Part shown: one piece after another, positions 1-20,200 of the stretch
Numbering within the stretch: position 1 is the first letter of the stretch
Layout of the letters: each line of letters begins with the position of its first letter
Assembly (NCBI RefSeq): GCF_037042905.1
Contig: NC_087245.1
Span: forward strand, 1,674,001-1,738,000
DNA length: 64,000 bases
Reading direction: 5' to 3'
Source: Lytechinus pictus
Lineage: Eukaryota
Translations under genes and position numbers: made by a program
The notes under the pieces: model-generated
Databases searched by the model: none
The model's input: the letters and a program-made list of their open reading frames with translations, nothing else
What the model was told of the DNA's origin: nothing

Positions 1-42
1 TTCCAGATGACCCAATATTGCTTCTACAACAGATTCGGCCAT
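1..42 (-). CDS. 5' end (first 14 codons, MAESVVEAILGHLE) of a paralogous TRIM/RBCC gene running off the window edge
   Basis: Bases 1-84 are essentially identical to 16989-17072, the start of the RING-B-box ORF. ATG at 42-40 in the same CAAACC-ATG-G context. Upstream flank homology continues to about 570. Confidence 0.85.
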   Translation of the reverse strand, partial: MAESVVEAILGHLE

Positions 43-2700: not shown

Positions 2701-3076
2701 ACTGGTGCTCAAACACATACACTCTAAAAATAGTTGGGCAAAAAATGCCCAACTTTTAACCAACCCTGGGCAACATACTGTCTACAGAACTCCAAATTGG
2801 GTAATAAAAACTAATGATTGGGTAATAAATTTGCTCAATTTGATAATAATTGCCCAGAATACATATATTTTTTACCAACATACATAACCCAACACAATGG
2901 ACAGTATGCTGCCCAACTCTTCAAGTGTGTACATAAAAGATGCTATTTGTAAATATCACCAATTTTAAGAACTTTAAACTTTTAGAATAGTGGTACAGAA
3001 GGTGTTCTGGCATGGGAGCAAGTAAAATTGTGATGCAGGAAATATAAAAGAATATTGGGTCAAATGCATAAAAAGT

Positions 3077-3604
3077 GGCTCGGTTTAAAAATGGCAGTGG
3101 AAAAAATGGCAAAGGTAAATATGGCAGAGGAATAAATAGCAGCGGTAATTATGGCAGAGGTAATACTGGCAGAGGTAAAAATTTGAGTTGGTATTTTTTT
3201 TTCCTGGACATACATGCACGACCTCCTCATGTGAAATCGCTCTTCTAATATTCAAATTTGAAGAACACTTTGGATCTCAAATATTGTACTTAATTCATTA
3301 CAGGGGAAATTCACACTGACATAAAGTTTATTAAAATGATATTGGTGAGGGTTTTAGGGAATCCATCAAAGATTTAAAAAGCTACTAAAATTTTACATGT
3401 TAATTACCTCTGCCATTATTACCTCTGTCATTTTTACCTCTGCCATTTTTACCTCTGCCATTTTTACCTTTGCCATTTTTACCTATGCCATTATTACCTC
3501 TGCCATTTTTACCTCTGCCATTTTTACTCTGCCATTTTTATATACATCTGCCATTATTACCTCTGCCATTGCCATTATTACCTCTACCATTTTTACCTGA
3601 CACC
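3077..3604. mobile_element. Small foldback-type remnant: inverted arrays of a 15-bp subrepeat (AAAATGGCAGAGGTA / TACCTCTGCCATTTT)
   Basis: Left array about 3077-3181 starts GGCTCGGTTTAAAAATGG. Right array about 3402-3604 ends CCATTTTTACCTGACACC, the reverse complement in geometry. No TSD found. Confidence 0.55.
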
Positions 3605-6600
3605 ATCTATTCGGATCCAATATGATGAATTTAATTGAATTGGATTTATTAGAACTTCACTGGCAATTGCCAATATTTTGTTCATAACAAGAAGTACAAA
3701 ATGATACAAGACAAATATACAATGCAAGGAATATAAGCAAATAAACAAAAACAAAATAGTATTTCGTCAAAAAGAAAAAAAAGAAAGAAAAAAAAGAAAC
3801 AACCTATAAGTTATATACAAATATACACAACTTTAAGTCAGTGTGAATTTCCCCTGTAATCAAATATACACAATGATGTTGAAATATGAATAATTAAAAG
3901 ATTTGTTATTTTTCTGTTATCCAAGTTATGTAAGTGGTTCAAAGAAATCCCGAACTCGTCTATTTTCAGTGTGTTAATGGTAGCGCACATTGGTGTTTTC
4001 ATTAAAATTCGTTTGATATGTATGTGATGAAGTGCTGTTTTGCTATACGAACTGCCCAATATAAATCCTTTCATCACTCATTAATTAAAATCATTTTGGC
4101 ATGAAAATGTTTGAGTTTTATCATATCAACGATTAAGTACAGACCTAAAATGGTGAAAAACAATCCAAATAATATCTCATCAGTTCATAATACTCATTTC
4201 GTCGAGGAGTTCATTCAAGGTCAATAATTATGACTGATATTAAACGGAAAGGCTCTATCTTTTCCTTGCTGATGTAGCATGTCATGATCTTTACCTCTGT
4301 CATGTCTGTCATTTTTGCCTCTGCCATTATTACCTCTGTCATTTTTACCTCTGCCATTTTTACCTCTGTCATTATTACCTCTGCCATTATTACCTCTGCT
4401 ATTTTTACCTCTGCCATTTTTACCTTTGCCATTATTACCTCTGCCATTTTTACTCTGCCATTTTTATATACATCTGCCATTATTACCTCTGCCATTGCCA
4501 TTATTACCTCTACCATTTTTACCTGACACCATCTATTCGGATCCAATATGATGAATTTAATTGAATTGGATTTATTAGAACTTCACTGGCAATTGCCAAT
4601 ATTTTGTTCATAACAAGAAGTACAAAATGATACAAGACAAATATACAATGCAAGGAATATAAGCAAATAAACAAAAACAAAATAGTATTTCGTCAAAAAG
4701 AAAAAAAAGAAAGAAAAAAAAGAAACAACCTATAAGTTATATACAAATATACACAACTTTAAGTCAGTGTGAATTTCCCCTGTAATCAAATATACACAAT
4801 GATGTTGAAATATGAATAATTAAAAGATTTGTTATTTTTCTGTTATCCAAGTTATGTAAGTGGTTCAAAGAAATCCCGAACTCGTCTATTTTCAGTGTGT
4901 TAATGGTAGCGCACATTGGTGTTTTCATTAAAATTCGTTTGATATGTATGTGATGAAGTGCTGTTTTGCTATACGAACTGCCCAATATAAATCCTTTCAT
5001 CACTCATTAATTAAAATCATTTTGGCATGAAAATGTTTGAGTTTTATCATATCAACGATTAAGTACAGACCTAAAATGGTGAAAAACAATCCAAATAATA
5101 TCTCATCAGTTCATAATACTCATTTCGTCGAGGAGTTCATTCAAGGTCAATAATTATGACTGATATTAAACGGAAAGGCTCTATCTTTTCCTTGCTGATG
5201 TAGCATGTCATGATCTTTACCTCTGTCATGTCTGTCATTTTTGCCTCTGCCATTATTACCTCTGTCATTTTTACCTCTGCCATTTTTATATACATCTGCC
5301 ATTATTACCTCTGCCATTGCCATTATTACCTCTACCATTTTTACCTGACACCATCTATTCGGATCCAATATGATGAATTTAATTGAATTGGATTTATTAG
5401 AACTTCACTGGCAATTGCCAATATTTTGTTCATAACAAGAAGTACAAAATGATACAAGACAAATATACAATGCAAGGAATATAAGCAAATAAACAAAAAC
5501 AAAATAGTATTTCGTCAAAAAGAAAAAAAAGAAAGAAAAAAAAGAAACAACCTATAAGTTATATACAAATATACACAACTTTAAGTCAGTGTGAATTTCC
5601 CCTGTAATCAAATATACACAATGATGTTGAAATATGAATAATTAAAAGATTTGTTATTTTTCTGTTATCCAAGTTATGTAAGTGGTTCAAAGAAATCCCG
5701 AACTCGTCTATTTTCAGTGTGTTAATGGTAGCGCACATTGGTGTTTTCATTAAAATTCGTTTGATATGTATGTGATGAAGTGCTGTTTTGCTATACGAAC
5801 TGCCCAATATAAATCCTTTCATCACTCATTAATTAAAATCATTTTGGCATGAAAATGTTTGAGTTTTATCATATCAACGATTAAGTACAGACCTAAAATG
5901 GTGAAAAACAATCCAAATAATATCTCATCAGTTCATAATACTCATTTCGTCGAGGAGTTCATTCAAGGTCAATAATTATGACTGATATTAAACGGAAAGG
6001 CTCTATCTTTTCCTTGCTGATGTAGCATGTCATGATCTTTACCTCTGTCATGTCTGTCATTTTTGCCTCTGCCATTATTACCTCTGTCATTTTTATCTCT
6101 GCCATTTTTACCTCTGTCATTATTACCTCTGCCATTATTACCTCTGCTATTTTTACCTCTGCCATTTTTACCTTTGCCATTATTACCTCTGCCATTTTTA
6201 CTCTGCCATTTTTATATACATCTGCCATTATTACCTCTGCCATTGCCATTATTACCTCTACCATTTTTACCTGACACCATCTATTCGGATCCAATATGAT
6301 GAATTTAATTGAATTGGATTTATTAGAACTTCACTGGCAATTGCCAATATTTTGTTCATAACAAGAAGTACAAAATGATACAAGACAAATATACAATGCA
6401 AGGAATATAAGCAAATAAACAAAAACAAAATAGTATTTCGTCAAAAAGAAAAAAAAGAAAGAAAAAAAAGAAACAACCTATAAGTTATATACAAATATAC
6501 ACAACTTTAAGTCAGTGTGAATTTCCCCTGTAATCAAATATACACAATGATGTTGAAATATGAATAATTAAAAGATTTGTTATTTTTCTGTTATCCAAGT

Positions 6601-7131
6601 TATGTAAGTGGTTCAAAGAAATCCCGAACTCGTCTATTTTCAGTGTGTTAATGGTAGCGCACATTGGTGTTTTCATTAAAATTAGTTTGATATGTATGTG
6701 ATGAAGTGCTGTTTTGCTATACGAACTGCCCAATATTAATCCTTTCATCACTCATTAATTAAAATCATTTTGGCATGAAAATGTTTGAGTTTTATCATAT
6801 CAACGATTAAGTACAGACCTAAAATGGTGAAAAACAATCCAAATAATATCTCATCAGTTCATAATACTCATTTCGTCGAGGAGTTCATTCAAGGTCAATA
6901 ATTATGACTGATATTAAACGGAAAGGCTCTATCTTTTCCTTGCTGATGTAGCATGTCATGATCTTTACCTCTGTCATGTCTGTCATTTTTGCCTCTGCCA
7001 TTATTACCTCTGTCATTTTTACCTCTGCCATTTTTACCTCTGTCATTATTACCTCTGCCATTATTACCTCTGCTATTTTTACCTCTGCCATTTTTACCTT
7101 TGCCATTATTACCTCTGCCATTTTTACCTTT
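3402..7131. repeat. Tandem array of four ~926-bp units (periods 926, 822, 926), each a 15-mer array plus a ~690-bp spacer
   Basis: Near-identical ORF-track entries recur at 3838/4764/5586/6512. The units differ by only a few SNPs and by subrepeat number. Confidence 0.95.
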
Positions 7132-8173
7132 TGCTTGCGGTTTGAACAATAGTGACGTCACGCTGCGCTGGTGCGAACAATAGCGACGTCACGCTGCGCT
7201 GGTGCGAACACGACTCACAGAACAAAAGCGGTATTTGAAGCAAAAGTGTGGCAGTGTAAAATATCGCTTCTCTCCTGTCTGCCTGTAACATCTTTTCCTC
7301 AAACGTGCTGTCAAACATTTCTCTTTTCTAATTAAAAAATGTATAATTGGCATTCAGTTCGCACTTACTAGGAAGAAAACATGAACATGTAGGATACTGT
7401 ACACCTTGGGGTTCTCTCTCAATTTACTTAAACATGTTCTAAGACGCGATCGGGCTGATCAAGCCCCGGCCGGATCAAGCAAACGCTCAAGCTGCTCTGA
7501 AGAATCTTTGGAAAACCCAAGGAAGTAAAATCATTTCATTTGAAGTTCGGCATAATGTTAGGAATGATTAAGTCTTTATTTTGCCCTATGCAAAAACCCT
7601 ATGCAACAAGTTCTGCATGTGATCGGAGTAAAATCCAAATCGGCTTCAAGTCGCAGCCGATGACCGTTTGACGTCATTACGATTTGGAATTAAATTTGCT
7701 TTTATTCCTACAGGGAGTCTCGAACTGAACCGAGTTTCGATTTAAGTAGCCCTACCACCATTCTTTACTCTTATCGCTAAGATTCTATTGGCTGGAATGT
7801 TCATATCAAATGTTATTACAATTTCTTTAAACTTCGGATCGCAGTGACTCGCATGGTGTGCGCCGGGCTTTGGTTTGATTGAACCGTGACTAGACGACCA
7901 AAGACTAGTACGCGTAGTAGAAGACGGATGATAACATTTAATATGGGCAAGATTATGAAATGAATGATAGGTAACTAGCAATCATCAACTGGTACAATAT
8001 GGATTAAGTTTGATTTATGAATACATTTTGATCATCCATTTTTCTTATCCCGACCCCCCCCCCCCCCGAAAAAAAAATTGACGAAAAAGTGGTCTAATAC
8101 AGAATAGCAACGTATTGTTCTACCCGTTTCCTTGATCATGATCGCCATGTTTTCTGCTAGGGTAAGGGGATAC

Positions 8174-8597
8174 TTTTTTTTCTTTCAATGATTTTTTTAT
8201 TTTCATAACTTCATATACATATAACAAACATCATCATTATACATTGTACATATTATATACAAATTGAAAAAAAATACAAAACAAAGCATAATAAAAAAGG
8301 GGTAAAAATTAAAAAATAAATAAAAAACATTTCAGGATTGAATTGTTATGACATCACATTTGATTTCGTTTTCCATCAAGCTGCCTAAACTATTATATGA
8401 ATGAGGGATGTAGAATTTTCCATTTCTTTTCAAACTTAGATAATTTTTTATTCTGAATGCCAATTTGTTTTTCTATTTTGTATATTCGTTTCAGCTTTAC
8501 ATAGAACAAATCAAAAGACGGTGAAATATTCAAATGCCTGCATGTATAAATCATTTGTTTAGCTACAACTAAACTACAATTTTTCTTTACATCACCT
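8174..8597 (-). mobile_element. 5'-truncated Tx1/L1-clade LINE 3' end (ORF2 C-terminus, 3' UTR, A-rich tail)
   Basis: Minus-strand translation NCSLVVAKQMIYTCRHLNISPSFDLFYVKLKRIYKIEKQIGIQNKKLSKFERKWKILHPSFI* (stop 8395-8393) aligns with the C-terminus of the 11427-15230 ORF2 (NCIIFFIKYAIF...EEEKCLAIKSGKLSLHVKKWEEL). AATAAA and an A-rich tail lie near 8200-8174. Confidence 0.8.
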
Positions 8598-9097
8598 CTA
8601 GTTCCACGTCGAGTTGGGGGGAGAGGAGCAGTTACTGAAAGATTTATGAGTGTTAAAGAGATACCTTGGTAGTCGTTCAGCTTCCCTATTTAATGATAGA
8701 AGCTCAGTCCTGATTTTGGTACTTTCTTTACTATGCTTGTGTATCTTGCCATGGTCTTCAATATTGGGGTCTGGGTTGGGGTTGTTAAGTCCCCCTCTCA
8801 AGATTTCTACTTGAAAAGAACTCAAAGTGTTAGAATAGTTTGGTACCATAGCCTTTGTGAAGCTTTTCCGAACAAAGGCAGTGCTGGGCATTGAAGTTGA
8901 CTGCTTGCTATTCAATAGTTGAGAGTAGTTATTATTAGAACATACATAAAGGCCAAACAGCGCCAGAATAATACAAAACTGGAGAGCATCCATGGTGTAA
9001 TACAGGAAGCATTTCTTTCTTGATGACATTGTTGAGCACTGATAGTGAGAAGTCTGCTCATGCGATATTTGATCCTGTGGAACTTCTATCTCTTCAC
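8598..9097 (-). CDS. Putative terminal exon 2 of the TRIM gene: linker, hydrophobic/TM helix, degenerate 2A-like motif
   Basis: Strong acceptor (ttttgttcctctcacatacttctgcag|GTGAAG, AG at 9099-9098) in phase 1, matching the phase-1 donor at 16081. The frame is open to the stop at 8600-8598 and contains ALQFCIILALFGLYVC and YSNTLSSFQVEILRGGLNNPNPDP. Confidence 0.5.
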
Positions 9098-9216
9098 CTG
9101 CAGAAGTATGTGAGAGGAACAAAATATATCAGAGAATGAAGTCAAATGCAGAAAATATAATTTCATGGATTTAGCATTCATGAACAATGCCACCTGTCCC
9201 ATTTTCAGTAATTTAA

Positions 9217-9376
9217 TATATATATATATATATATATATAGTATATATATATGCGAAACAAATGATAATATTCACCAGTAATGTAAGTTTGCAATGCCAA
9301 CAAAGTTTTTTATTAGCTTTCTAAATTTCCGGTAGTCATCTACCTTCTTCGGGAAAGATTCATGAAGATTCATATA

Positions 9377-9423
<47 letters not shown>

Positions 9424-9446
9424 AGGGTGTGTGTGTGTGTGTGTGT
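9217..9446. repeat. (TA)n and (TA)n(TG)n microsatellites
   Basis: Directly visible at about 9217-9252 and 9383-9446. Confidence 0.9.
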
Positions 9447-9447
9447 G

Positions 9448-9523
9448 GAGGGGCCGTGGCCGAGTGGTCTAAGGCGCCTGGCTATACATGGAAAGTTCGG
9501 GGTTCGATCCGCGGCACCTATGC
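9448..9523 (+). mobile_element. tRNA-derived SINE, 5' fragment
   Basis: A box TGGCCGAGTGG and B box GGTTCGATCC. Same family as 26267-26425. Embedded in (TG)n. Confidence 0.75.
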
Positions 9524-9555
9524 TCCTATGTGTGTGTGCGTTAGGGTGTGTGTGT

Positions 9556-12500
9556 CTTTTGATTAGTAATGTGTCTTAATCAAACTAAATAATACGAGGT
9601 TTCAGCTTTACAGCTTGCTTACTCTTTATTTTTGGAGCATGGAATTGATAATGGAATTTATCAGGACAGGATCCCCCCTTAATTTTTTTTGGGGGGATGT
9701 TTTGTTTTCAATTATTTTTGTCATCGCAGTGGTTTTTTTTTAAATGGAAGGTTTATGAATTGGTACCACAATGGCAAATAAAAATATAATGCGCTTTATT
9801 TTCAGTGCTAGTTTTTAGTTGTGGTAAAACTGGAATTGAAGAGGAAGTGGTAAACCAGACGGGTGCAGTGTTTATCAGTCTATTCCTCAATTGCAGGAGG
9901 ATCCACCCTATTCACGCATTATTTGGTTCCTATAGAATTTAATGTTGGAAATAGACTTGAGTTCTTTGGATATAATATGTTTGGGTTATTAACTTGGTGT
10001 TGGCATATTAGCTATGCATGACCGCCAAGTTAATGGCATGGGAAAGTGTGGTTGGGTGACTGGCGAATTGTTGCTTTGGATATGTTGGATGTTGAATGAA
10101 TTTGATTAGAGTAAATAGGTCTTTAGTCCTCATTAACAAGGGAAAAAAAAGGACTGGAATGTTGATATTATTGAAAACAGGTATATGCTCAGAGAATAAG
10201 AAATCATTCCTTCATTATTTATTCATTTCCTTTGTGTATGGAATGTAATTGCTTTTTACGTGCAAAGTGCAGGTGTAGTTAACCATTCACGTGTGTAGGT
10301 CCTTTTAGCTTTTTATCTCTCTTTGCCCTGATTAGGGCTCTGATGCATAACTCCGGCAAGGCAAGGCTATCAGTCTTTGGAAAATATTTATGGAAAAAAA
10401 AGAATGCGATTTGATTAGTTATGCGTCTTAATCAAACTAAAAAATACGAGGTTTCAGCTTTACAGCTTGCTTACTCTTTACTTTCGGAGCATGGAATTGA
10501 TAATGGAATTTATTAGGACAAGCTCCCCCCTTATTTTTTTTTTTTTTTTGGGGGGGGGGTTGTTTTGTTTTCAATCATTTTTGCCACCGCAGTGGTTTTT
10601 GACAAGGAAGGTTTATGAATTGGTATTATTATAATACACTCACTTTAAAGATATAGATGTAAAGTTGTAAGGAAATGGTGCATGATTTTCGTTGTTTGAT
10701 TATCCTTACATCAATGATGTAAGAGATGTTCTAGCTAGTTGCAGCTAGACGGATAGCTAGCTGTATAGCCTTTTTCATTTTAGTATGAAGATGAATAATT
10801 TAGTAGATCGTTCTCTTTTATGTCATGTTTGCATCTGAGTAAAACCAAGAAGAGATTTCTTTGAAAAAATCCAAACCCCCACTTTTTTATGCTTGAGTTA
10901 TAGTACATGAAGTAAAGATGAGAATATTCATTCTGAAACAAATTTAGGCACATCGGAAAAGTCTCATTGCAGTTGGTTTTATGGGGGGGGGGGTAATTTA
11001 GAAAGTAATGGAAAGGTATTTTCTTTTCTACGGTAAACCAGACAGGTGCAGTGTTAAACAATCAATTCCTTGAATTGCAGAAGGATTCATCCTATTCACG
11101 CATTATTTGGTTCCTATAGAATTTAATGTTGGAAATAGACGGGAGTTTCTTTGGATATAATATGTTTGGGTTAGGCTTAACTTGGTGTTGGCATATTAGA
11201 TATGCATGACCTCCACGTTAATGGCATGGGGAAGTGTGGTTGGATGACTGGCGAATTATTGTGTTGGATATGTTGGATGTTGAATGAATGGGGGTGTTTG
11301 GAGTGTGATACTATGAGAGGGCGTGGTTGTATTGTGTTTGTGTTGCCTGTTTGCATTTCATGGGTAGTCTTTCATGTCTTTCATTCATTCAGGTTCTGTT
11401 GTATTTTTCGGATTGGGTAAAAGTGTATGGATAGAAGGTTATATTTTACTTTACTCACTTTAAATGTCAGAGGTCTAAGAGACAAGGCTAAAAGAAAAAA
11501 CATTTTTGAATTTTGCAAAAATAAAGGGAGTAATATTGTGTTTTTACAGGAAACCTATAGTACGGAAGAGGTTGAAGAGAAGTGGAAATTAGAGTGGAAT
11601 GGGCCTATATTGTTTAGTCATGGAACGAACCATAGTAGAGGTGTTTCAGTTCTCATTTCTCCAATTTTAAATATAAAAATGGATAATGTTATTTTTGATG
11701 AAAATGGAAGATACGTCGTTATGAAGTTTGAATTTCAACAATCTAAAATAATTTTAGTTAATTGTTATTTCCCCACAAGAGATAAGGAGAAGATGCAAAT
11801 TGAATTTTTAGAGGAACTAGATAAATGTATTTCAAAGCTTTACAGCTCTGAAGAAATGATAATTATTGGGGGAGATTTTAATACAATAATGAATGGAGAT
11901 TTGGATTATTTAGGTCCAAGAATCTTTTATAAAAACAGATTTAACAAGAAATTTGATGGATTTTTAGATAGATTCGGTTTAGAAGATATATGGAGGAGGA
12001 TGAATCCTGAAAAGAAACAATTTACATTCAGGCAAAAATGTCCTATTATGCAAAGTCGATTGGATTATTGGTTCGGGTCCTCTGCTTTTCAGCATTTAGT
12101 TAATGGTTGTGATATTGTAACATCAATCACGCCAGATCATTCGGGCGTTCTGCTTCAATTAACAAGCAATGTAGACAAGCCACACTTAGGCAATTCATAT
12201 TGGAAGTTCAACAATAGTCTGTGCGCAGATCAGGAATTCGTGAATTTATTCAAAGATAAAATAGTTGAATTAAAAAAAGAATGGCTCCCGAAAATAGAAG
12301 ATAAATTATTGTTGTGGGATTTTTTAAAAATGAAAATGAGGGAGTTTATTAATAAGTACACAAAGAAAAAAGCAAAGCTTAGGAAACATGAAATTGAAAA
12401 ATTAGAGGAAGATATAAGAAGTTTGGAAATCCACCTATCGACTCAGCCTTCGAGGAAAATACTTGATGAAATGGAGGAGAAAAAGTCTAAATTGAACAGA

Positions 12501-15500
12501 TTGTTTGATTATAGCCGACAAGGTGTAAAAATCCGATCAAGAGCTTTTTGGTTTGAGGAAGGAGAACAAAAAACACAATATTTTGAACAGTTATTAAAAT
12601 CAAACAAACGGAAAAGTGTAATAAAAGAAATATATGATCAAGGTGAACAGACTATAAAAGATAGGAGTGAAATATTGAAGAAGATAAAGTCATTTTACGA
12701 AAAATTATATTCATTGAATGAAGTGATTGTAAATGAAAACTCTTTTTTCCTGAAGGATATTCCTAAATTATCCAAAGAAAGTCGAGATATTTGTGAAGGT
12801 AAAATTACTATTCAGGATTGTTTAAGTGTTTTGAAAGAAATGAAATTTAATAAAACCCCTGGAAACGACGGTTTTACTGTTGAATTTTATTACACCTTTT
12901 GGAATTTATTGGGGGGATTTTTGGTGGAAGTGTTAAATGAAGTGTATAATAGGGGATTATTAGCAACTTCACAAAGGCAGGGAGTGATTACACTATTAGA
13001 AAAGGAAGGCAAAAACCCTTTATACATTCAAAACTATAGACCAATCACGCTTTTAAATGTTGATTACAAGATCTTATCAAAGGTACTAGCAAAAAGATTG
13101 AAAAAGGTTCTGAATGAGATAATTCATATTGATCAAATAGGGTATGTTGAAAATAGGAACATTGGAGATGGTGTGAGATTAATCGATGATATTTTATTTC
13201 AGTCCTCTTTTGGAAATATTGGATATTTGATTACGGTGGACTTTGAAAAGGCTTTTGATTCTGTTTCCCATGATTTTCTTTTTCAGACTCTTAAATTATT
13301 TGGATTTGGCCAGTCTTTCTGTTCTTGGGTTCGTGTTTTATATACAGATATAACTAGTTGTATTATGAATGGAGGTTATTCCACTGGTTATTTTGATATA
13401 AAACGAGGGGTAAGACAGGGGGACCCCATTTCTCCTTATCTGTTTTTGCTCTGTATAGAAACACTAGCTTTGGCAATAAGAAGAGACGCTCTAGTTGAAG
13501 GAATTCAGTTTGGATCTCATGAAATTAAGCAAATATTGTATGCCGATGATATCACTCTGTTTGTTAAAAATAGCAATTCTGTTAAACGGCTTAAATATCT
13601 TTTGGAAGAATTCGAAAAAGTGAGCGGTCTGAAGATAAACAAAGGGAAAACAAACTTTTTTTGGATGGGAAAAGATCAAGACAGACCTCAAACTCCGCTA
13701 TTTGGAAATTTGGTTCAGCAAATTAAAATCTTAGGCGTTTATTTCTCTCTAAATGTAATAATAAAAGAAGATCTAAACTTCAAAGAGATACTAAGCAAAA
13801 TAAAAAGACTTTTGGGATGGTGGAAACAAAGGGATCTAACCCTAATGGGTAAAATACAATTGTTGAAAAGTTATGCATTATCAAAATTAAATTACGTCTC
13901 GTCACTTTTAGTTGTTCCTAAGTGGTTGTTCGTTGAGGTGGAACGGATCACTTTTGAGTTTTTATGGTCAGGTAAAGACCGTATAAAGAGAAACATTATG
14001 TATCAGGATTACTCACACGGTGGGTTAAGAATGATGAATTTTAAGTTGTTCATAAAGGCCCAACGTCTAATGTGGCTGAAACGTCTATTATACGGGGAAC
14101 GCAATGCTGGGTGGAAATTGTATTTTGATTTCTGTTTTAGATCACTCGGTGGGAGACTGTTATTTCTATGCGATTTTGATATTTGCAAATTAACACAGAC
14201 AATGCCACAATTTTATTCTGAAATGCTGAAGGCTTGGCAAGATATGAGAAAATATAGATATACAAAAGAGGAAGTAAACCCGATTATATTTAATAATAAG
14301 AATGTATGTGTAAGAGGTAAAATGATTTTTGATATTGATCTTTATAATAAGGGAATATACACTGTAGATCATATTTTTGATAACGGGGTTGTGAGACCTG
14401 TGGCTTATTTTCAAAATCTTGGGGTAACCGCAGATGAACTGCTCCACATTATTGATATAGTACATGCTATTCCAATTACTTGGAAAAATGCCTTTAGCTC
14501 TATTAAATTTATAAAGATTGACGATGAGAACTTCAATGTTAATTTGAATATCAGTAAGCTGGAAACTACTTTTGAGGTGATTAAATCAAAAATTATTTAT
14601 AGTTGTTTTGTTGAAAATTTACGGGAAACTTACAATTTAACATTGAAAGATAAAAACATTAATTTGAATTTTACAGATGTTGAAATGTGTAATAGGCTTG
14701 CCCAAACCAGGAGCATAACTTTGATTAGGAAACAAAGAGAATTCCAGTTCTTACTTTTACACGGGGCGATTTATACCAAAGAACAGTTATTGAGATTTGG
14801 GTATGTTAAAGACAGTTTATGCTCTTTTTGTGGCAGAGAAACCGAATCATACATTCATATTTTTCTAAATTGTCCCAAGGTAAAACCTTTATGGGAATTT
14901 TTCATTAAATATTTCTGTATGTCTGAATTAAGAGATTTAGAATGGAGAGATATACATTTGGGATTATCTGGAAGTACGAATAGAAATAATTGTGTAAACT
15001 GTATAATCTTTTTCATCAAATATGCCATTTTCCAATCCAGAACTAATGGTCAGGTTCCTTCCTGCCATAAAATACAAAAATATATTGCGGAACGTAGGGA
15101 GGAAGAAAAATGCTTAGCTATAAAATCGGGCAAATTGAGTTTGCATGTAAAGAAATGGGAAGAACTGAAGGTGAATGAGGCAGTGAATGCAAACAGGTGT
15201 GAAGCGTCTGCTGGTGCTGTGAGTATGTAATGGTATGTCCGCGTGTGAATGCGAGTGTGCAATGGTATATGTCCGCGTGTGAATGTGAGTGCTTGCTGCC
15301 AGGGATGGGGGGGGGGGGGTTCCTATCTCCATGGTTAGCAAAATATATGTTTGAGTAGATCCAAAAAGAAAGAATATTTTGTTTGGGGTGTGGAAAAGGT
15401 TTTGTTTGTTTTATTTTGTTGATGTTGTGTTTTGTTTTGTTTTCGTGTGTGCTTTATATACAAAATCTTTATTCAGATTATTGTATACTTTCTAAGAATA

Positions 15501-15881
15501 AACATAGAGACTTTTTTTTTTCTGTATTGTCTTACAAAATTTGGAGGAATGAATATACATGTATAAGTACTTTTTTTTTATTATGGGATAACCTCTTCAC
15601 TTAAAAAAAGTCTGTACTTTTGATTTTTCATCATACAATACGGTATTATTATACAGTAAATACATGTGAAATTACGAGGTTTTTGTTATTGGTATTATGG
15701 GTTATGATACTATTTGTTCGAAAAATTTATATCAAGATGTATATTATTTCATATGTTATATTGCTGTATAAGTGTACTTCACTTTAATTTGCATACATGT
15801 ATTTGATTTATTACCCTTGTACATGAAAAATGTAATAGTATCTGAATAAAGGCTAAAAAAGCAAGAGAAAAAAAAAAAAAA
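9556..15881 (+). mobile_element. Tx1/L1-clade non-LTR retrotransposon with intact ORF2, ~1.9-kb 5' non-coding region, ~650-bp 3' UTR and poly(A)
   Basis: Intact APE-RT-zinc-knuckle ORF. AATAAA at 15845-15850 and poly(A) at 15868-15881. The 5' boundary is approximate and no TSD was identified. Confidence 0.85.
11427..15230 (+). CDS. LINE ORF2 polyprotein (apurinic endonuclease, reverse transcriptase, zf-RVT), 1267 aa, Tx1-like
   Basis: APE motifs TLNVRGL, FLQET, GGDFN, SRLDYW, PDHS. RT motifs KTPGNDG, YRPITLLNVDYK, DFEKAFD, GVRQGDPISP, YADD. C-terminal CSFC...HIFLNC. No stops or frameshifts. Confidence 0.97.
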   Translation: MDRRLYFTLLTLNVRGLRDKAKRKNIFEFCKNKGSNIVFLQETYSTEEVEEKWKLEWNGPILFSHGTNHSRGVSVLISPILNIKMDNVIFDENGRYVVMKFEFQQSKIILVNCYFPTRDKEKMQIEFLEELDKCISKLYSSEEMIIIGGDFNTIMNGDLDYLGPRIFYKNRFNKKFDGFLDRFGLEDIWRRMNPEKKQFTFRQKCPIMQSRLDYWFGSSAFQHLVNGCDIVTSITPDHSGVLLQLTSNVDKPHLGNSYWKFNNSLCADQEFVNLFKDKIVELKKEWLPKIEDKLLLWDFLKMKMREFINKYTKKKAKLRKHEIEKLEEDIRSLEIHLSTQPSRKILDEMEEKKSKLNRLFDYSRQGVKIRSRAFWFEEGEQKTQYFEQLLKSNKRKSVIKEIYDQGEQTIKDRSEILKKIKSFYEKLYSLNEVIVNENSFFLKDIPKLSKESRDICEGKITIQDCLSVLKEMKFNKTPGNDGFTVEFYYTFWNLLGGFLVEVLNEVYNRGLLATSQRQGVITLLEKEGKNPLYIQNYRPITLLNVDYKILSKVLAKRLKKVLNEIIHIDQIGYVENRNIGDGVRLIDDILFQSSFGNIGYLITVDFEKAFDSVSHDFLFQTLKLFGFGQSFCSWVRVLYTDITSCIMNGGYSTGYFDIKRGVRQGDPISPYLFLLCIETLALAIRRDALVEGIQFGSHEIKQILYADDITLFVKNSNSVKRLKYLLEEFEKVSGLKINKGKTNFFWMGKDQDRPQTPLFGNLVQQIKILGVYFSLNVIIKEDLNFKEILSKIKRLLGWWKQRDLTLMGKIQLLKSYALSKLNYVSSLLVVPKWLFVEVERITFEFLWSGKDRIKRNIMYQDYSHGGLRMMNFKLFIKAQRLMWLKRLLYGERNAGWKLYFDFCFRSLGGRLLFLCDFDICKLTQTMPQFYSEMLKAWQDMRKYRYTKEEVNPIIFNNKNVCVRGKMIFDIDLYNKGIYTVDHIFDNGVVRPVAYFQNLGVTADELLHIIDIVHAIPITWKNAFSSIKFIKIDDENFNVNLNISKLETTFEVIKSKIIYSCFVENLRETYNLTLKDKNINLNFTDVEMCNRLAQTRSITLIRKQREFQFLLLHGAIYTKEQLLRFGYVKDSLCSFCGRETESYIHIFLNCPKVKPLWEFFIKYFCMSELRDLEWRDIHLGLSGSTNRNNCVNCIIFFIKYAIFQSRTNGQVPSCHKIQKYIAERREEEKCLAIKSGKLSLHVKKWEELKVNEAVNANRCEASAGAVSM

Positions 15882-16061
15882 GTTAATACGTTTCCCTTCT
15901 CGCCGTTCTTATTCTCCAAGCCTCTTATCGAAAAGAGAACTTTCAATGACAAAATCTTCAGTAAAATCTTTGTACACATCTCAAATGACTTAAAAGTTGG
16001 AGATAAAAGTGCGATTACAAACAAATCGATATGCCTGAAACTCATTTCCATTTAGAGGAAA

Positions 16062-17030
16062 TTATGAAATTGTGATCGTACCTTGGTTATTAGCTTCTGG
16101 AACCTGCAACCGAAGGACGCCCAAGTTAGGTGCCTCAAAAACCGGTGCCTCATTCTCGGAGAAATGAAAAGATCCAACTTTGGTACATTGACGCCTTGCA
16201 GCTACATCATTAGGAATTTGTTGGTCTGTTCCTTGACGGAGGCGTTTTGCCAAGTCCTCGTATCGCAAAACAACTTCCTTTGGCTCAGTACTATCCAAAA
16301 GTTCTTCAGCAAATTTGATTTCTTCTGTGACTTTGGAAACCGCTTCCCCTACAGGTATCAATATGTTGTCTAAAGCTTCGTTAAGATCACTCCGATTGGT
16401 TTTGACCTCTGCCAGGAGCTCCTCTTTCCTATGATTGATGATATCAGTAATACGTTCTAAATACGAATTGAAACGTACTTTGATTACTTCTGATATATTG
16501 TCAAGTCGTTCATTTCCTTCCGCTTGTTTAGCCGCATAGTCTCCACGAAAATTCTCAAAAGACTCCATCCATTCCGTTGCTTTACTCATCAATTTTACGA
16601 TTTCTTCCACTTTTGCTGCGGAAGCTTTTTCCAAGTTCTTAATCAAGAATGTATGTTCCCCGTGATTGCAAAGGGCACACTCGCTACAGATTAGCACGTT
16701 ACATTTCTCACAGAAGAATTTCTTTCCGGCACCATGCTCCTTGCAGAATTCTTTCTTTGATTCAGAATCCTCATGGCGTTTGATTTCTTCGATGATCTGG
16801 TTGGCCAACAAATTTGGTCTCAGAGCTTCCGATCTATCATAATCATAACCTGTTTCTTGACGGCATATCGGGCACCTGATCCTATTACCTGCATTTGCCT
16901 CTATTGCCCGATTAATGCAGCTCTCACAAAAAGTATGCAAACATTTGAGGCATTTTGCATGTTCCAATCTGCAGTGACAGATAGCACATTCCAGATGACC
17001 CAATATTGCTTCTACAACAGATTCGGCCAT
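16062..17030 (-). CDS. TRIM/RBCC-family E3 ubiquitin ligase (RING, B-box 2, coiled coil): 322 aa unspliced, or exon 1 (17030-16082) of a 482-aa spliced form
   Basis: C3HC4 RING (CAIC...CLKCLHTFCESC...CPIC), B-box2 (CKEH...CEKC...CSEC...H..H) and a heptad-rich helical region. The ORF ends abruptly after a donor-like CAAG|GTACGA. Confidence 0.92.
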   Translation of the reverse strand: MAESVVEAILGHLECAICHCRLEHAKCLKCLHTFCESCINRAIEANAGNRIRCPICRQETGYDYDRSEALRPNLLANQIIEEIKRHEDSESKKEFCKEHGAGKKFFCEKCNVLICSECALCNHGEHTFLIKNLEKASAAKVEEIVKLMSKATEWMESFENFRGDYAAKQAEGNERLDNISEVIKVRFNSYLERITDIINHRKEELLAEVKTNRSDLNEALDNILIPVGEAVSKVTEEIKFAEELLDSTEPKEVVLRYEDLAKRLRQGTDQQIPNDVAARRQCTKVGSFHFSENEAPVFEAPNLGVLRLQVPEANNQGTITIS

Positions 17031-17100
17031 GGTTTGTGCGGAAAGAGAAACATCAAAGTATGGTTCAACTCCTACACAACTAAGAAGCAGGTAGCCCTAT

Positions 17101-17234
17101 ATGTTGAATATTTGTAAACAAAACTTATGCCTTTGGCATAGAGGTGGGTTTTCCCCACTGAACTATATATAGTTCAGTGGGGAAAACCCACCTCTATGCC
17201 AAAGGCATAAGTTTTGTTTAGAAATATCCAACAT
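17101..17234. repeat. Near-perfect 134-bp palindrome (106-bp perfect core 17115-17220) upstream of the TRIM ATG, carrying two inverted Rel/NF-kB-like GGGAAAACCC sites
   Basis: Centre AACTATATATAGTT at 17161-17174. The arms pair base for base from 17115 to 17220, with two mismatches further out. Confidence 0.92.
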
Positions 17235-20200
17235 TCAAGTTCAGTAGTCTACCCGGTTCACAGAACCTTTCAGTGCACGTGTGTAATACTACTTTCTGTA
17301 GTGTATGTCAAAGCTATCCATTACTAGTTTGCAGGCACAGACCTTTATTAGTTTTTGCATAGTGCACAATGCAGATTTTGAAGTGGTGAGGCTAGATTCT
17401 CTTACTTGACACAGACAGAGAATTTGGCATCTAGTCCTCACCCTAGACTTGGTATAATTGGACAAAGTGTCAAACATGAGTCTGTTCTTGCAGACTAATC
17501 CATCGTCGCTTGGTTCAGTCATAAAAGAAACAAATTCTTGTAATTGGGATTTCAAACATTCAACATTCTGTTCTAATTTTCATGTATCAATTATTCTGTA
17601 CCCGTTTAAGAAAAAAAAAACGCTTTCATCTCAGTAATGGAATTTCTGCAAACTTCCCCTTCTGTCAGCTGATACATTTGTAAATCACTGTCCACGAAGT
17701 AATGGCACCTGTATATATGTTATATCATGTATAATAATTGTAAATACATGTATGTTATTGTTAACCTTTATATACATGTACATGTAATATGAATAAGCCT
17801 TTATTTGCCCCAACGGGGCCAAAAGGCATTCTTCCAATAAAGTTCAAGTTCATAAAGGTAGAAAGAAATGATTTAATGCACTGAGTTCTGATATTCTAAT
17901 GGTCCGATGCTATTCGATCCAGTATTATTTCCTCCGAGAGGCTTAAGTGTAAAAAAATCCTTTAAAACCATTCCGCAGCCCCTGTATAGTGCGAGTGAGC
18001 ACATCGAGATACATGGTATTCAAGGGCGTCCTATTAAGGGAAAATATTAGAGATTTTAAAGCCCTCTCAAAAAATTAATCTTATGACATTGCAAGATTGA
18101 TTGTTATTGATTCTAATTATGAAGTTTAGCAAATGATTTTGTGTCACACGATAAAATCGATTAATTGTTATTATATTCTTGAGGCACTGGTACTGTGCAT
18201 GCACCCATTTTGATATGGTCATATGCGCCCAAAGTGTTTCAATTATTGGGGTAAATGGAATAGCGGAGCGGTAGAACGACTTGAATTTTGCGTTTAACGC
18301 AAATTGAGTCAATAAGCACCGATATTCAAAAAGCATTCAATTTGATTCTAACATGATATCATTTTCGCGCATGTAGGTGTGTGTGCGTTATTTGTGTGGG
18401 AACGTGTGTGGGTTATACATTTAATAGTGGTTGCTAAAGCCCAAGCACCCCCCCTCCCCATTCGTTTTGCGGCACAAAATGTAAATTTTGTTACATAAAT
18501 ACCACTTCATGGTATAGAGCTTGATCGATCGAGAAACTCATAGGCGAAAACTGCTATCAGAAATAGAGAGATAGTAGTATACTCAAATAATTTAAGGACG
18601 GTTCACTTTAAAGGGGAAAAAATGAGCTATTATGAAGTTGGTTTACTAAGTCAAAAATGTATTTCCATTATGCAAGTATAAAAACGAGTTTAACATTCTT
18701 AACCAAAAATATTCGTTCAAGCAATATGCGCGCGCACATTTATGATGCACAATGAATATGCTAACAATTGATATAAATGAAGCCCATACGAAATCGCGCC
18801 TGAAAATCATTATTTACAGCTTCAAAATGGTTGATTGTAAAGTGACCGGAAACACATTAATATCATTGCATAGACTAAAATGTAGTTTATTAATCAACTC
18901 AGAGGTGAAGTAATGATGATTTTCCAGTTACAAATATCTTGAAAGCGTCTCCATTAATTTTTTTTTCTACCTGGGTATTTTTTTTTCATTCATATGAACA
19001 TTATTAAATAGCTAGAACTAATAATCAAAGTTCATCATTTTATTAATAAGACCTTTTTGATACTAACCTATACCTTTAGTAGGGGAGGTAGAAATTGGGT
19101 AAATACGGTAGATTCGAGGTCTGTTTCCTAGACTGGTCTGTATATACCTTCATGCATGGCAGGGGAGGAGGGAATGGTGGAGCAGGGGCAGTTGCCTCAA
19201 GAAGTTTCTCAAACTTATTTTTTACTAAATATTTTCACGAAATCACCGAAATTTAAAGTGTGCATGAATCTTTTAATTTATTTTTATTAAACACAAAAGC
19301 GCCCCTGACGATCTCGGTCGCTTCGCTCTCTTGCTTTCGAGTTTCTTCGAAAATTGTTAAGTGTCTTGCCCCCGCCCCCGGAAAAAAATCTGCGTGTGGT
19401 AATGAGTACCTTCAGTCAGATGACAGCAATTATTGTCGGTTTTTACAACAGGTTGGACAGAGAATATAATAACAACAAATTAACAGATTTAATTAAGAGA
19501 AAATTATAAACCTGCATGTCCTATTTCTCTATCATAGGTTTAATTACTATAACAAACGAAAACTTTAGATAAATTGTATTAAAATTGAGAAAATCCTTGC
19601 GTTACAGAATAGCAGAGTTATGGATTTCTAATTTTCTGACATTTTGAGATCATGCTTCCCTTATTTCATGAAATTTTTATTCTATAAAGTGTAATTCAGC
19701 AGTCATCTTTGATGAAGACGTAGTTATACTACCTATATTAAAGTGTATAGAAGAGCTGTACGATCATTTGACGTCAATATTAAAAATTAAAAAACTAATG
19801 TAAAGAATAAGATTCTTATTTGTATTGCCTTTTGTATTTTACCATTCATTCCTTTTAATTATCTATCATTTTCTGTCTTTATCAAAACAAATTTAATTTC
19901 AGATCAGACTTCCCCCTTATTAAGCGAGACTCAGATTTATACCTCGTTTGCGCATGCGTGTCGATTATTAGATCCAACTGGAGTCACGATTGAAAACTGC
20001 TCCTTTAGTCATTTTTAATTACTAATCATGCTTAAAATGACATAAATAGTTTTTTAGAATTCACAAGAATTGATAAAAAGACACATCCTTGCGATATTTA
20101 GCAAAATGCCAGTCTTTGTTTGTTCTACATCAGCAGTATACTTCCTAACAGAAATCGTTGGTTGTTTGTAATGTGAAAGGAAAAGGCAATTGGATTTGCT

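What the first reader, a model, noticed from the sequence alone, without database searches (positions are those of the whole stretch)
8598..17030. TRIM E3 ligase that may splice across a LINE into an exon with a TM helix and a decayed retroelement 2A-like motif
Seen: the RING/B-box/coiled-coil ORF ends just after a good donor, CAAG|GTACGA (phase 1, GT at 16081-16080). About 7 kb downstream on the same strand is a strong acceptor (long pyrimidine tract, CAG at 9100-9098), also phase 1. Joining 17030-16082 to 9097-8598 gives an uninterrupted 482-aa protein: ...NNQ|GEEIEV...MDALQFCIILALFGLYVC...PNYSNTLSSFQVEILRGGLNNPNPDP...RTELLSLN...LP. Established: RING-B-box-CC-TM is the architecture of membrane-anchored TRIM13/TRIM59. 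'YSN...SFQ..L..GD..PNPGP' is the 2A/StopGo-like context found near the N-terminus of L2/Crack-group LINE ORFs in marine invertebrates. Inference: an immune-type TRIM may have captured the 5' end of a LINE ORF as its last exon, gaining a membrane anchor while the ribosome-skipping motif decayed (NPGP to NPDP is one substitution). The adjacent Tx1 tail (AATAAA near 8200) could supply the poly(A) signal.
Basis: partly seen in the sequence, partly recalled or inferred. Interest (0 to 1): 0.8.

Follow-up and report, generated by a model that had tools for sequence, protein, structure and literature searches.

The report
TRIM gene tail built from a LINE
A duplicated sea-urchin TRIM ubiquitin-ligase gene has lost its usual target-binding propeller domain and now ends in coding sequence from the front of a jumping gene (a LINE), which adds a possible membrane helix and a dead ribosome-skipping motif; this is a tidy example of a known kind of gene–transposon fusion, and RefSeq already annotates the protein.

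Summary
The donor at 16082/16081, the acceptor at 9098/9097 and the 482-aa join are all real. The joined protein is identical to the Lytechinus pictus RefSeq model XP_063960036.1.

The LINE origin of the tail is proven. The tail is 49-54% identical (E 7e-18) to N-termini of LINE ORFs that carry an intact GD[IV]xxNPGP 2A motif. It aligns in register with several intact ~1070-1090-aa LINE ORFs of this genome. The hydrophobic helix belongs to the same LINE module.

- The acceptor and the first 65 nt of the exon are not LINE. They are 79% identical to the acceptor of the last exon of the tandem paralog, which encodes a 267-aa NHL-type β-propeller. The LINE 5' end therefore replaced the propeller rather than being captured as a whole exon.
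- The 2A core is hit at three invariant positions (D→L, I→N, G→D), not one, so it should be inactive.

A 5'-truncated tail of a young L1/Tx1-like LINE lies 26 nt after the stop and carries sense AATAAA signals.

Membrane anchoring and any immune role were not tested. Verdict: real, a new member of a known kind, of moderate interest.

The parts
16082..17030 (-). TRIM-A coding exon 1: RING, B-box and a helical coiled-coil region (316 codons plus 1 base, phase-1 end).
   Evidence: ORF. Pfam RING and B-box hits. 89.6% aa identity to paralog B and 65% to S. purpuratus. dN/dS against B is 0.35.
16062..16081 (-). Donor GT (16081-16080) and the read-through codons GTITIS-stop. These would end an unspliced 322-aa isoform; the nearest AATAAA is at 15812.
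9098..16081 (-). Intron of 6,984 nt. Only its two ends are homologous to the paralog's intron: about 140 nt after the donor and about 85 nt before the acceptor.
   Evidence: (blastn hits 15942-17127 and 9033-9181).
11427..15230 (+). Intact 1267-aa LINE ORF (APE + RT + zf-RVT), antisense to the TRIM gene and inside the intron.
9033..9181 (-). Ancestral 3' intron end, polypyrimidine tract, CAG acceptor and the first ~65 nt of the family's NHL exon. The reading frame is shifted by indels relative to the paralog.
   Evidence: 79% identity to paralog B's last-exon acceptor region at C1:1666976-1667120.
8573..9032 (-). 5'-end fragment of a 2A-type LINE, single copy in the genome, read in the LINE's own frame. 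An apparent frameshift near 8625 creates the TAG at 8600-8598.
   Evidence: phmmer hit to P0010 with E 7e-18. tblastn 6e-25 over 8891-8616. Intact LINE ORFs match 9026-8667. A decayed relative, L002, is 73.5% identical over 9021-8822. DNA is unique in the genome.
8940..8996 (-). Hydrophobic helix TMDALQFCIILALFGLYVC (protein residues 351-369).
   Evidence: KD mean 1.85. An equivalent helix lies 67-78 residues before NPGP in five LINE N-termini.
8766..8837 (-). Decayed 2A/StopGo relic YSNTLSSFQVEILRGGLNNPNPDP.
   Evidence: Alignment A1. All six LINE relatives have GD[IV]xxNPGP; the exon has GLNNPNPDP.
8174..8572 (-). 5'-truncated 3' tail of a young L1/Tx1-like LINE family, in sense orientation, with AATAAA at 8452 and 8201. 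This is the probable 3' UTR and poly(A) signal.
   Evidence: Copies are 88-96% identical. Copies share up to 1.36 kb ending at a common 3' end. The upstream ORF of a longer copy has a zf-RVT-like C-terminus. Signals located.
1..42 (-). Start of the tandem paralog TRIM-B. Its exon 1 is C1:1674042-1673038 and its NHL exon is C1:1667034-1666231, both outside the window.

Best explanation
This is a tandem duplicate (TRIM-A) of a two-coding-exon TRIM-NHL-type gene of Lytechinus pictus. The family's normal structure is exon 1 (RING, B-box, coiled coil, phase-1 donor) followed by one last exon that encodes a six-bladed NHL-type propeller. In TRIM-A the last exon survives only as its acceptor plus 65 nt. 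At about 9033 it abuts the 5' end of a sense-oriented, 2A-bearing LINE.

The inherited donor and acceptor still join. The frame then runs from the coiled coil through the stump into the LINE's own ORF frame: a pre-2A peptide with a hydrophobic helix, a 2A relic, and a linker. It stops at a TAG made by a frameshift in the LINE sequence. A younger LINE tail just downstream supplies poly(A) signals.

The product is an RBCC E3-ligase core with no substrate-binding propeller and a 165-aa tail that is mostly LINE-derived. The 2A relic cannot skip. Inferred, not shown: the tail is mainly a by-product of the propeller's loss. The protein acts, if at all, through its conserved RING/coiled coil, for example by pairing with the 89%-identical paralog. 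The helix may or may not tether it to membranes.
For: The join equals RefSeq model XP_063960036.1.

Splice sites are inherited. The donor is identical in paralog B and is used at the same position in S. purpuratus models. The acceptor region is 79% identical to paralog B's NHL-exon acceptor, and the homology ends at 9033.

The propeller is lost. Paralog B's last exon folds as an NHL propeller: pLDDT 75.5, with top Foldseek hits to TRIM2, TRIM3, Thin and Brat at E about 1e-10. No remnant of that exon lies elsewhere in the window.

The tail is LINE-derived. The helix is part of the LINE module.

The 2A is dead. The core is mutated at D, I/V and G. D12A alone abolishes StopGo activity (PMC12846837), and non-conservative core changes are inactive (PMC3708506).

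Exon 1 is still constrained. dN/dS is 0.35, and lineage-specific changes are 10 in A versus 9 in B.

The LINE tail carrying AATAAA is in sense orientation.

Sequence-run evidence is suggestive only. Both exons are held by the same small-contig runs of the species: X15 0.82/0.86, X16 0.57/0.79, X1 0.37/0.21.
Against: No junction read was seen. The RefSeq model could be partly ab initio.

No protein containing the tail, other than the model itself, was found in the protein collections. No orthologue was available.

Keeping the LINE-derived frame open is not significant under neutrality. In a substitution-only simulation, 14-21% of sequences stay open at 10-13% divergence.

An AATAAA 250 nt after the 16062 stop could serve an unspliced 322-aa isoform.

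The route by which the LINE 5' end came to abut the stump is unresolved. It could be insertion into a complete exon followed by deletion, or a partial duplication with the LINE at the junction.
Confidence: 0.65

Rival explanations
1. The LINE-derived exon is not used in vivo. TRIM-A is effectively a single-coding-exon gene giving the 322-aa RING/B-box/coiled-coil protein that stops at 16062. On this reading the RefSeq 482-aa model over-extends it.
For: A stop lies 20 nt after the donor and an AATAAA lies 250 nt further on. S. purpuratus has a 328-aa model that ends at the same point. No junction reads were obtained. No independent ORF with the tail exists in the protein collections.
Against: Both splice sites are inherited and intact. 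Gene modellers rarely add a terminal exon 7 kb away that has no protein homology unless RNA alignments support it (inference). Exon-2 words occur in the same probable RNA runs as exon-1 words, and vary between samples of one study.
Confidence: 0.17
2. TRIM-A exon 1 acts as an alternative first coding exon. It splices past paralog B's exon 1 to the intact NHL exon at C1:1667034, giving a full TRIM-NHL protein. The LINE exon would then be a minor or noise isoform.
For: TRIM-A exon 1 is as constrained as B's. Donor phase and sequence are identical, and the NHL acceptor is phase-compatible and lies on the same strand about 23 kb downstream.
Against: There is no model or read for this join. In S. 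purpuratus each paralog has its own NHL exon. A nearer, intact, homologous acceptor at 9098 would compete.
Confidence: 0.1
3. The tail is an adaptive gain. On this reading the LINE pre-2A helix was co-opted as a membrane anchor, turning a cytosolic TRIM-NHL into a TRIM13/59-like membrane E3.
For: The hydropathy peak of 1.85 exceeds the usual 1.6 threshold. The frame is open over 144 LINE-derived codons, whereas a decayed relative has 3 stops in about 70 codons. Some exon-2 words occur in runs of a second species at a share of 0.10-0.15. N-terminal 2A-like sequences of sea-urchin NLRs act as signal sequences (PMC4981915).
Against: The open frame is not significant under neutrality. The 3' end of the tail is made by a frameshift. 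The word share in the second species is lower for the tail than for exon 1, about 6.6% versus 3.7% divergence by my own estimate. There are no localisation data. The AlphaFold model of the whole protein is uninformative (pLDDT 38).
Confidence: 0.15

Closest known systems
TRIM-NHL proteins (TRIM2, TRIM3, TRIM71, Brat, Thin)
   Same: It has the RING, B-box and coiled-coil N-terminal half. The paralog's last exon folds as an NHL-type six-bladed propeller. TRIM-A descends from this family.
   Different: TRIM-A has lost the propeller. No Pfam NHL or filamin hit was found even in the paralog, so the family is a divergent echinoderm branch.
TRIM13 / TRIM59 (RING, B-box, coiled coil, transmembrane helix)
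   Same: The overall order is an RBCC followed by a hydrophobic helix.
   Different: The helix is LINE-derived and not homologous to theirs. It lies about 110 residues from the C-terminus rather than at it. Membrane insertion is untested.
2A-bearing APE-type non-LTR retrotransposons (Odon et al. 2013, PMC3708506)
   Same: The tail aligns with the N-terminal region of single-ORF LINEs that carry GD[IV]xxNPGP upstream of the APE domain. These include intact copies in this genome.
   Different: Only the first ~150 codons are present. There is no APE or RT, and the motif is mutated to GLNNPNPDP. The clade (Rex1, L2 or CR1) was not determined.
2A-like signal sequences at N-termini of sea-urchin NLR proteins (Roulston et al. 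2016, PMC4981915)
   Same: A host gene of a large sea-urchin family carries 2A-type sequence, together with a hydrophobic targeting-like element.
   Different: There the element is N-terminal, 26 aa long and active in recoding. Here it is C-terminal, clearly LINE-derived and dead.
Transposable-element exonisation and gene–TE chimeric terminal exons
   Same: TE sequence supplies the coding 3' end, the stop codon and the poly(A) signal of a host gene.
   Different: The TE is read in its own ORF frame, through an inherited host acceptor rather than a TE-borne one.

Membership tests
TRIM / RBCC | N-terminal RING finger | tested here: met
   Pfam zf-RING_UBOX and zf-C3HC4 hits at residues 14-57.
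TRIM / RBCC | B-box zinc finger after the RING | tested here: met
   PF00643 at residues 92-128, 27.4 bits against a cut-off of 24.1.
TRIM / RBCC | Coiled coil after the B-box | tested here: inconclusive
   Long helices are predicted at residues 123-266, but the model has pLDDT 38.
TRIM-NHL | C-terminal NHL β-propeller | tested here: not met
   Present in paralog B. Absent from TRIM-A and from the whole window.
TRIM13/59-type membrane TRIMs | A transmembrane helix that anchors the protein in a membrane | not testable with these tools
   Only hydropathy is available (KD 1.85). The helix is homologous to LINE N-termini, not to TRIM13/59.
2A / StopGo recoding element | Core motif D(V/I)ExNPGP with a suitable upstream context | tested here: not met
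   The exon has L-N-N-P-N-P-D-P. The D, V/I and G positions are all changed. D12A alone abolishes activity.
2A-bearing APE-type LINE | Homology to the LINE ORF N-terminal module | tested here: met
   E 7e-18 and 6e-25 to P0010, which is followed on its contig by an APE ORF. Alignment A1.
2A-bearing APE-type LINE | APE and RT domains downstream | tested here: not met
   No APE or RT match on the minus strand below 8598. This is a fragment only.

The most novel reading that the evidence does not exclude
The pre-2A signal/anchor peptide of a sea-urchin LINE was co-opted, with its ribosome-skipping motif disabled, to convert a duplicated cytosolic TRIM-NHL ligase into a membrane-tethered E3 that is kept in Lytechinus. 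This would be a convergent route to the TRIM13/59 architecture. It would also be a second case, after the NLR 2A-like signal sequences, of LINE 5' modules being recruited for protein targeting by sea-urchin multigene families.
Probability: 0.15. Interest if true: 0.6.

Novelty: new member of a known kind. Interest (0 to 1): 0.4.

Why it matters
This is a clean, datable case in which a host gene reads a LINE's own N-terminal ORF in frame. It shows the step-by-step anatomy of a domain swap: inherited splice sites, a 65-nt exon stump, the LINE 5' end, and a second LINE tail acting as terminator.

It also shows that sea-urchin 2A LINEs carry a conserved hydrophobic helix about 70 residues before NPGP. 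That bears on two open questions: what the pre-2A peptide does, and where the 2A-like signal sequences of sea-urchin NLRs may have come from.

The protein is already in RefSeq, and gene–TE chimeras are common. The value is therefore illustrative rather than fundamental, unless the tail proves to be functional.

Tried and rejected
No read-level evidence could be obtained.
- Protein searches with the tail alone and with P0006 residues 318-482 found nothing.
- The look-up of encoding contigs had no record for P0006.
- A metagenome scan with the tail peptide and a scan with the exact junction 31-mer both found nothing.
- No retrocopy of the junction exists in the genome.
- P0007/L052, listed in the same protein cluster, turned out to be an unrelated Tc1-like fragment.
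- My first reading of 8572-8174 as a discrete ~400-bp SINE-like element was wrong. Copies share up to 1.36 kb with a common 3' end and a zf-RVT ORF, so it is a truncated LINE tail. No tRNA-like head was found.
- The single-sequence AlphaFold model of P0006 was too poor to use.
- The open-frame argument for selection on the tail was tested by simulation and is not significant.
- The search of earlier findings gave only two neighbouring first-reader notes.
Full report
**What is there.** On the minus strand, 17030-16062 is a 322-aa ORF with RING (residues 14-57) and B-box (92-128) Pfam hits. It crosses a donor AACCAAG|GTACGA (last exon base 16082) 20 nt before its stop. At 9098/9097 a pyrimidine-rich tract and a CAG precede an open frame that runs to a TAG at 8600-8598. 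Joining 17030-16082 to 9097-8598 gives 482 codons. Their translation is identical to P0006 = XP_063960036.1, 'tripartite motif-containing protein 2-like' of Lytechinus pictus. That model lies on a 44.3-Mb contig of the same length as this window's contig C1. The intron (16081-9098) holds an intact 1267-aa LINE ORF (APE, RT, zf-RVT) on the other strand at 11427-15230.

**The gene family.** The genome holds a tandem paralog, TRIM-B. Its exon 1 begins at window base 42 (C1:1674042-1673038; 89.6% aa identity) and has the same donor, CCAAG|GTACGA. About 6 kb downstream, at C1:1667034-1666231, lies a 267-codon last exon. A third pair of the same structure lies at C1:21.93-21.94 Mb. S. purpuratus models join the same donor position to the same kind of exon (P0003 of 453 aa, P0009 of 598 aa). 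A 328-aa model there stops at the donor. An AlphaFold model of TRIM-B's last exon, built from a 5-sequence alignment, has pLDDT 75.5 and pTM 0.77 and is all-β. Its best Foldseek matches in the PDB are the NHL propellers of TRIM2, TRIM3, Thin, TRIM71 and Brat (E about 1e-10, TM 0.62-0.68). Pfam itself sees no NHL repeat. The ancestral gene is thus a two-coding-exon TRIM with an NHL-type propeller.

**Where the second exon comes from.** Window 9181-9033 covers the last ~85 nt of the intron, the AG and the first ~65 nt of the exon. It is 79% identical to the acceptor region of TRIM-B's NHL exon. Both exons start GTGAAGAG (Gly-Glu-Glu). Indels then shift TRIM-A's frame, and homology stops at about 9033. 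No other part of the NHL exon is found anywhere in the window, by protein or by DNA search. About 140 nt after the donor and about 250 nt of upstream sequence are also shared between the two paralogs. The acceptor is therefore inherited, not LINE-borne. This explains the matching phase without appeal to chance.

**The LINE part.** The rest of the exon, from about 9032, is LINE.
- The tail peptide hits the N-termini of intact 1068-1091-aa LINE ORFs (APE + RT) in this genome. These begin with a hydrophobic helix followed by ...YYSNxxxSFQxxLLxCGDIxxNPGP.
- An exhaustive profile search gave P0010 with E 7e-18. P0010 is 54% identical over tail residues 69-161 and carries an intact ...FQVELLRGGDINPNPGP. 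tblastn against the window gives 6e-25.
- On its contig, P0010 is followed directly by an Exo_endo_phos_2 ORF.
- A decayed copy of the same family (L002) is 73.5% identical in DNA over 9021-8822. It starts within about 10 nt of where TRIM-B homology ends, and has three stops in about 70 codons.
- In alignment A1, all six LINE relatives have G-D-[IV]-x-x-N-P-G-P. The exon has G-L-N-N-P-N-P-D-P, so three invariant core positions are changed.
- The helix is part of the same module. In five LINE N-termini a segment with KD 1.46-2.28 lies 67-78 residues before NPGP; in the exon the values are 1.85 and 73 residues.
- No APE or RT remnant follows on this strand.
- Near 8625 the LINE homology appears to continue in another frame (…GTRG…), so the TAG results from a frameshift (read from the sequence together).
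- The DNA of 9400-8573 is single copy in the genome.

**The 3' end.** Window 8572-8174 matches many copies at 88-96% identity. Those copies share up to 1.36 kb that ends at a common 3' end. The ORF upstream in a longer copy has a zf-RVT-like C-terminus. The segment is therefore the 5'-truncated tail of a young L1/Tx1-like LINE, in the gene's orientation, inserted 26 nt after the stop. It carries AATAAA at 8452 and 8201. It is not similar to the intronic LINE.

**Is the 2A relic active?** It should not be. Odon et al. found that only conservative changes at the E position keep some activity (PMC3708506). D12A and N16A each abolish StopGo (PMC12846837). Here the equivalent D is L and the P-site G is D.

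**Is the gene alive?** Between A and B, exon 1 has dS 0.14 and dN/dS 0.35. With S. purpuratus as outgroup, there are 10 A-specific and 9 B-specific replacements, so there is no rate asymmetry. The RBCC half of TRIM-A is therefore still constrained, or is being homogenised by gene conversion. For the tail, a substitution-only simulation leaves the 144 LINE-derived codons open in 14-21% of trials at 10-13% divergence. Openness alone is therefore no evidence of selection.

**Transcript evidence.** This is indirect only.
- Word-index searches show that runs of the same species hold both exons: X15 0.82/0.86, X16 0.57/0.79, X1 0.37/0.21. Other samples of X1's study hold none, a pattern more like RNA than DNA, but the run types are guesses.
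- Runs of a second species hold about 0.3 of exon-1 words and 0.10-0.15 of exon-2 words. By my own estimate this corresponds to about 3.7% and 6.6% divergence. It suggests the tail exists there and evolves faster than exon 1 (inference).
- A 7-kb intron leading to a terminal exon without protein homologs is unlikely to be modelled without RNA alignments (inference).
- I put the probability that the spliced mRNA exists at about 0.75-0.8.

**Mechanism and rivals.** The best reading is as follows. A TRIM-NHL duplicate lost its propeller when a 5'-intact 2A LINE came to abut the exon stump. This happened either by insertion followed by deletion, or by a partial duplication with the LINE at the junction; which route is unresolved. 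The inherited splice sites now deliver the reading frame into the LINE's ORF. The result is an RBCC core with a 165-aa tail that contains a possible membrane helix and a dead 2A.

Three rivals remain:
- The exon is unused and the 322-aa form dominates. An AATAAA lies 250 nt after the stop.
- Exon 1 splices on to TRIM-B's NHL exon instead.
- The helix was co-opted as a membrane anchor.

None of these can be settled without reads or experiments.

**Novelty.** Gene–TE chimeric terminal exons are well known, and the protein is already in RefSeq. The following appear to be undescribed: the LINE origin of the tail, the 2A relic, the replacement of the NHL propeller, and the conserved pre-2A helix. 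Odon et al. use none of the words 'hydrophobic', 'signal' or 'transmembrane'.

Noticed in passing
L011:3295-3768, L013:3060-3566, L047:2011-2517(-), L004:1423-1875(-), P0012: Several distinct 2A-bearing LINE families of this genome share a hydrophobic helix (KD 1.5-2.3) 67-78 residues upstream of NPGP, right after a conserved 'TM' start. The pre-2A peptide therefore looks like a small signal or anchor protein. The 2013 survey of LINE 2As does not mention this.
   Followed up: partly
window 11427-15230 (+): An uninterrupted 1267-aa LINE ORF (APE, RT, zf-RVT) sits antisense in the TRIM intron. It may be a recently active copy.
   Followed up: no
window ~3000-7200: A higher-order tandem array of roughly 0.9-kb units, each embedding a 15-bp minisatellite (TCTGCCATTTTTACC, 10-13 copies). 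It lies between TRIM-A's 3' end and paralog B's promoter.
   Followed up: partly
window 16870-16890 (-), protein residues ~47-50: TRIM-A lacks a 13-residue acidic loop inside the RING that paralog B has; S. purpuratus has a comparable acidic loop there (B has ...ADSDSSDDSITYDRPNH...). The zinc ligands are kept.
   Followed up: no
exon 1 of TRIM-A and TRIM-B versus P0002/P0003: The two paralogs are about 89% identical within each species but about 65% identical between L. pictus and S. purpuratus. dS is lower in the first 130 codons (0.08 versus 0.18). This points to independent duplications or gene conversion.
   Followed up: partly
G000:C8:17.47-17.93 Mb (L016-L019): A dense cluster of at least nine ~630-aa single-exon RING/B-box genes whose C-termini weakly match the same NHL-type domain. 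This is a large tandem TRIM expansion.
   Followed up: no
window 17128-17280: Upstream homology between the two paralogs is interrupted here, where a perfect foldback palindrome lies just 5' of TRIM-A's ATG. That agrees with another first-reader note that only one paralog has it.
   Followed up: partly
protein cluster of P0001: The 90%-identity cluster lists a 43-aa JGI peptide (P0007) that is an unrelated Tc1-like fragment. The 298-aa representative also hides the 482-aa member from searches.
   Followed up: yes
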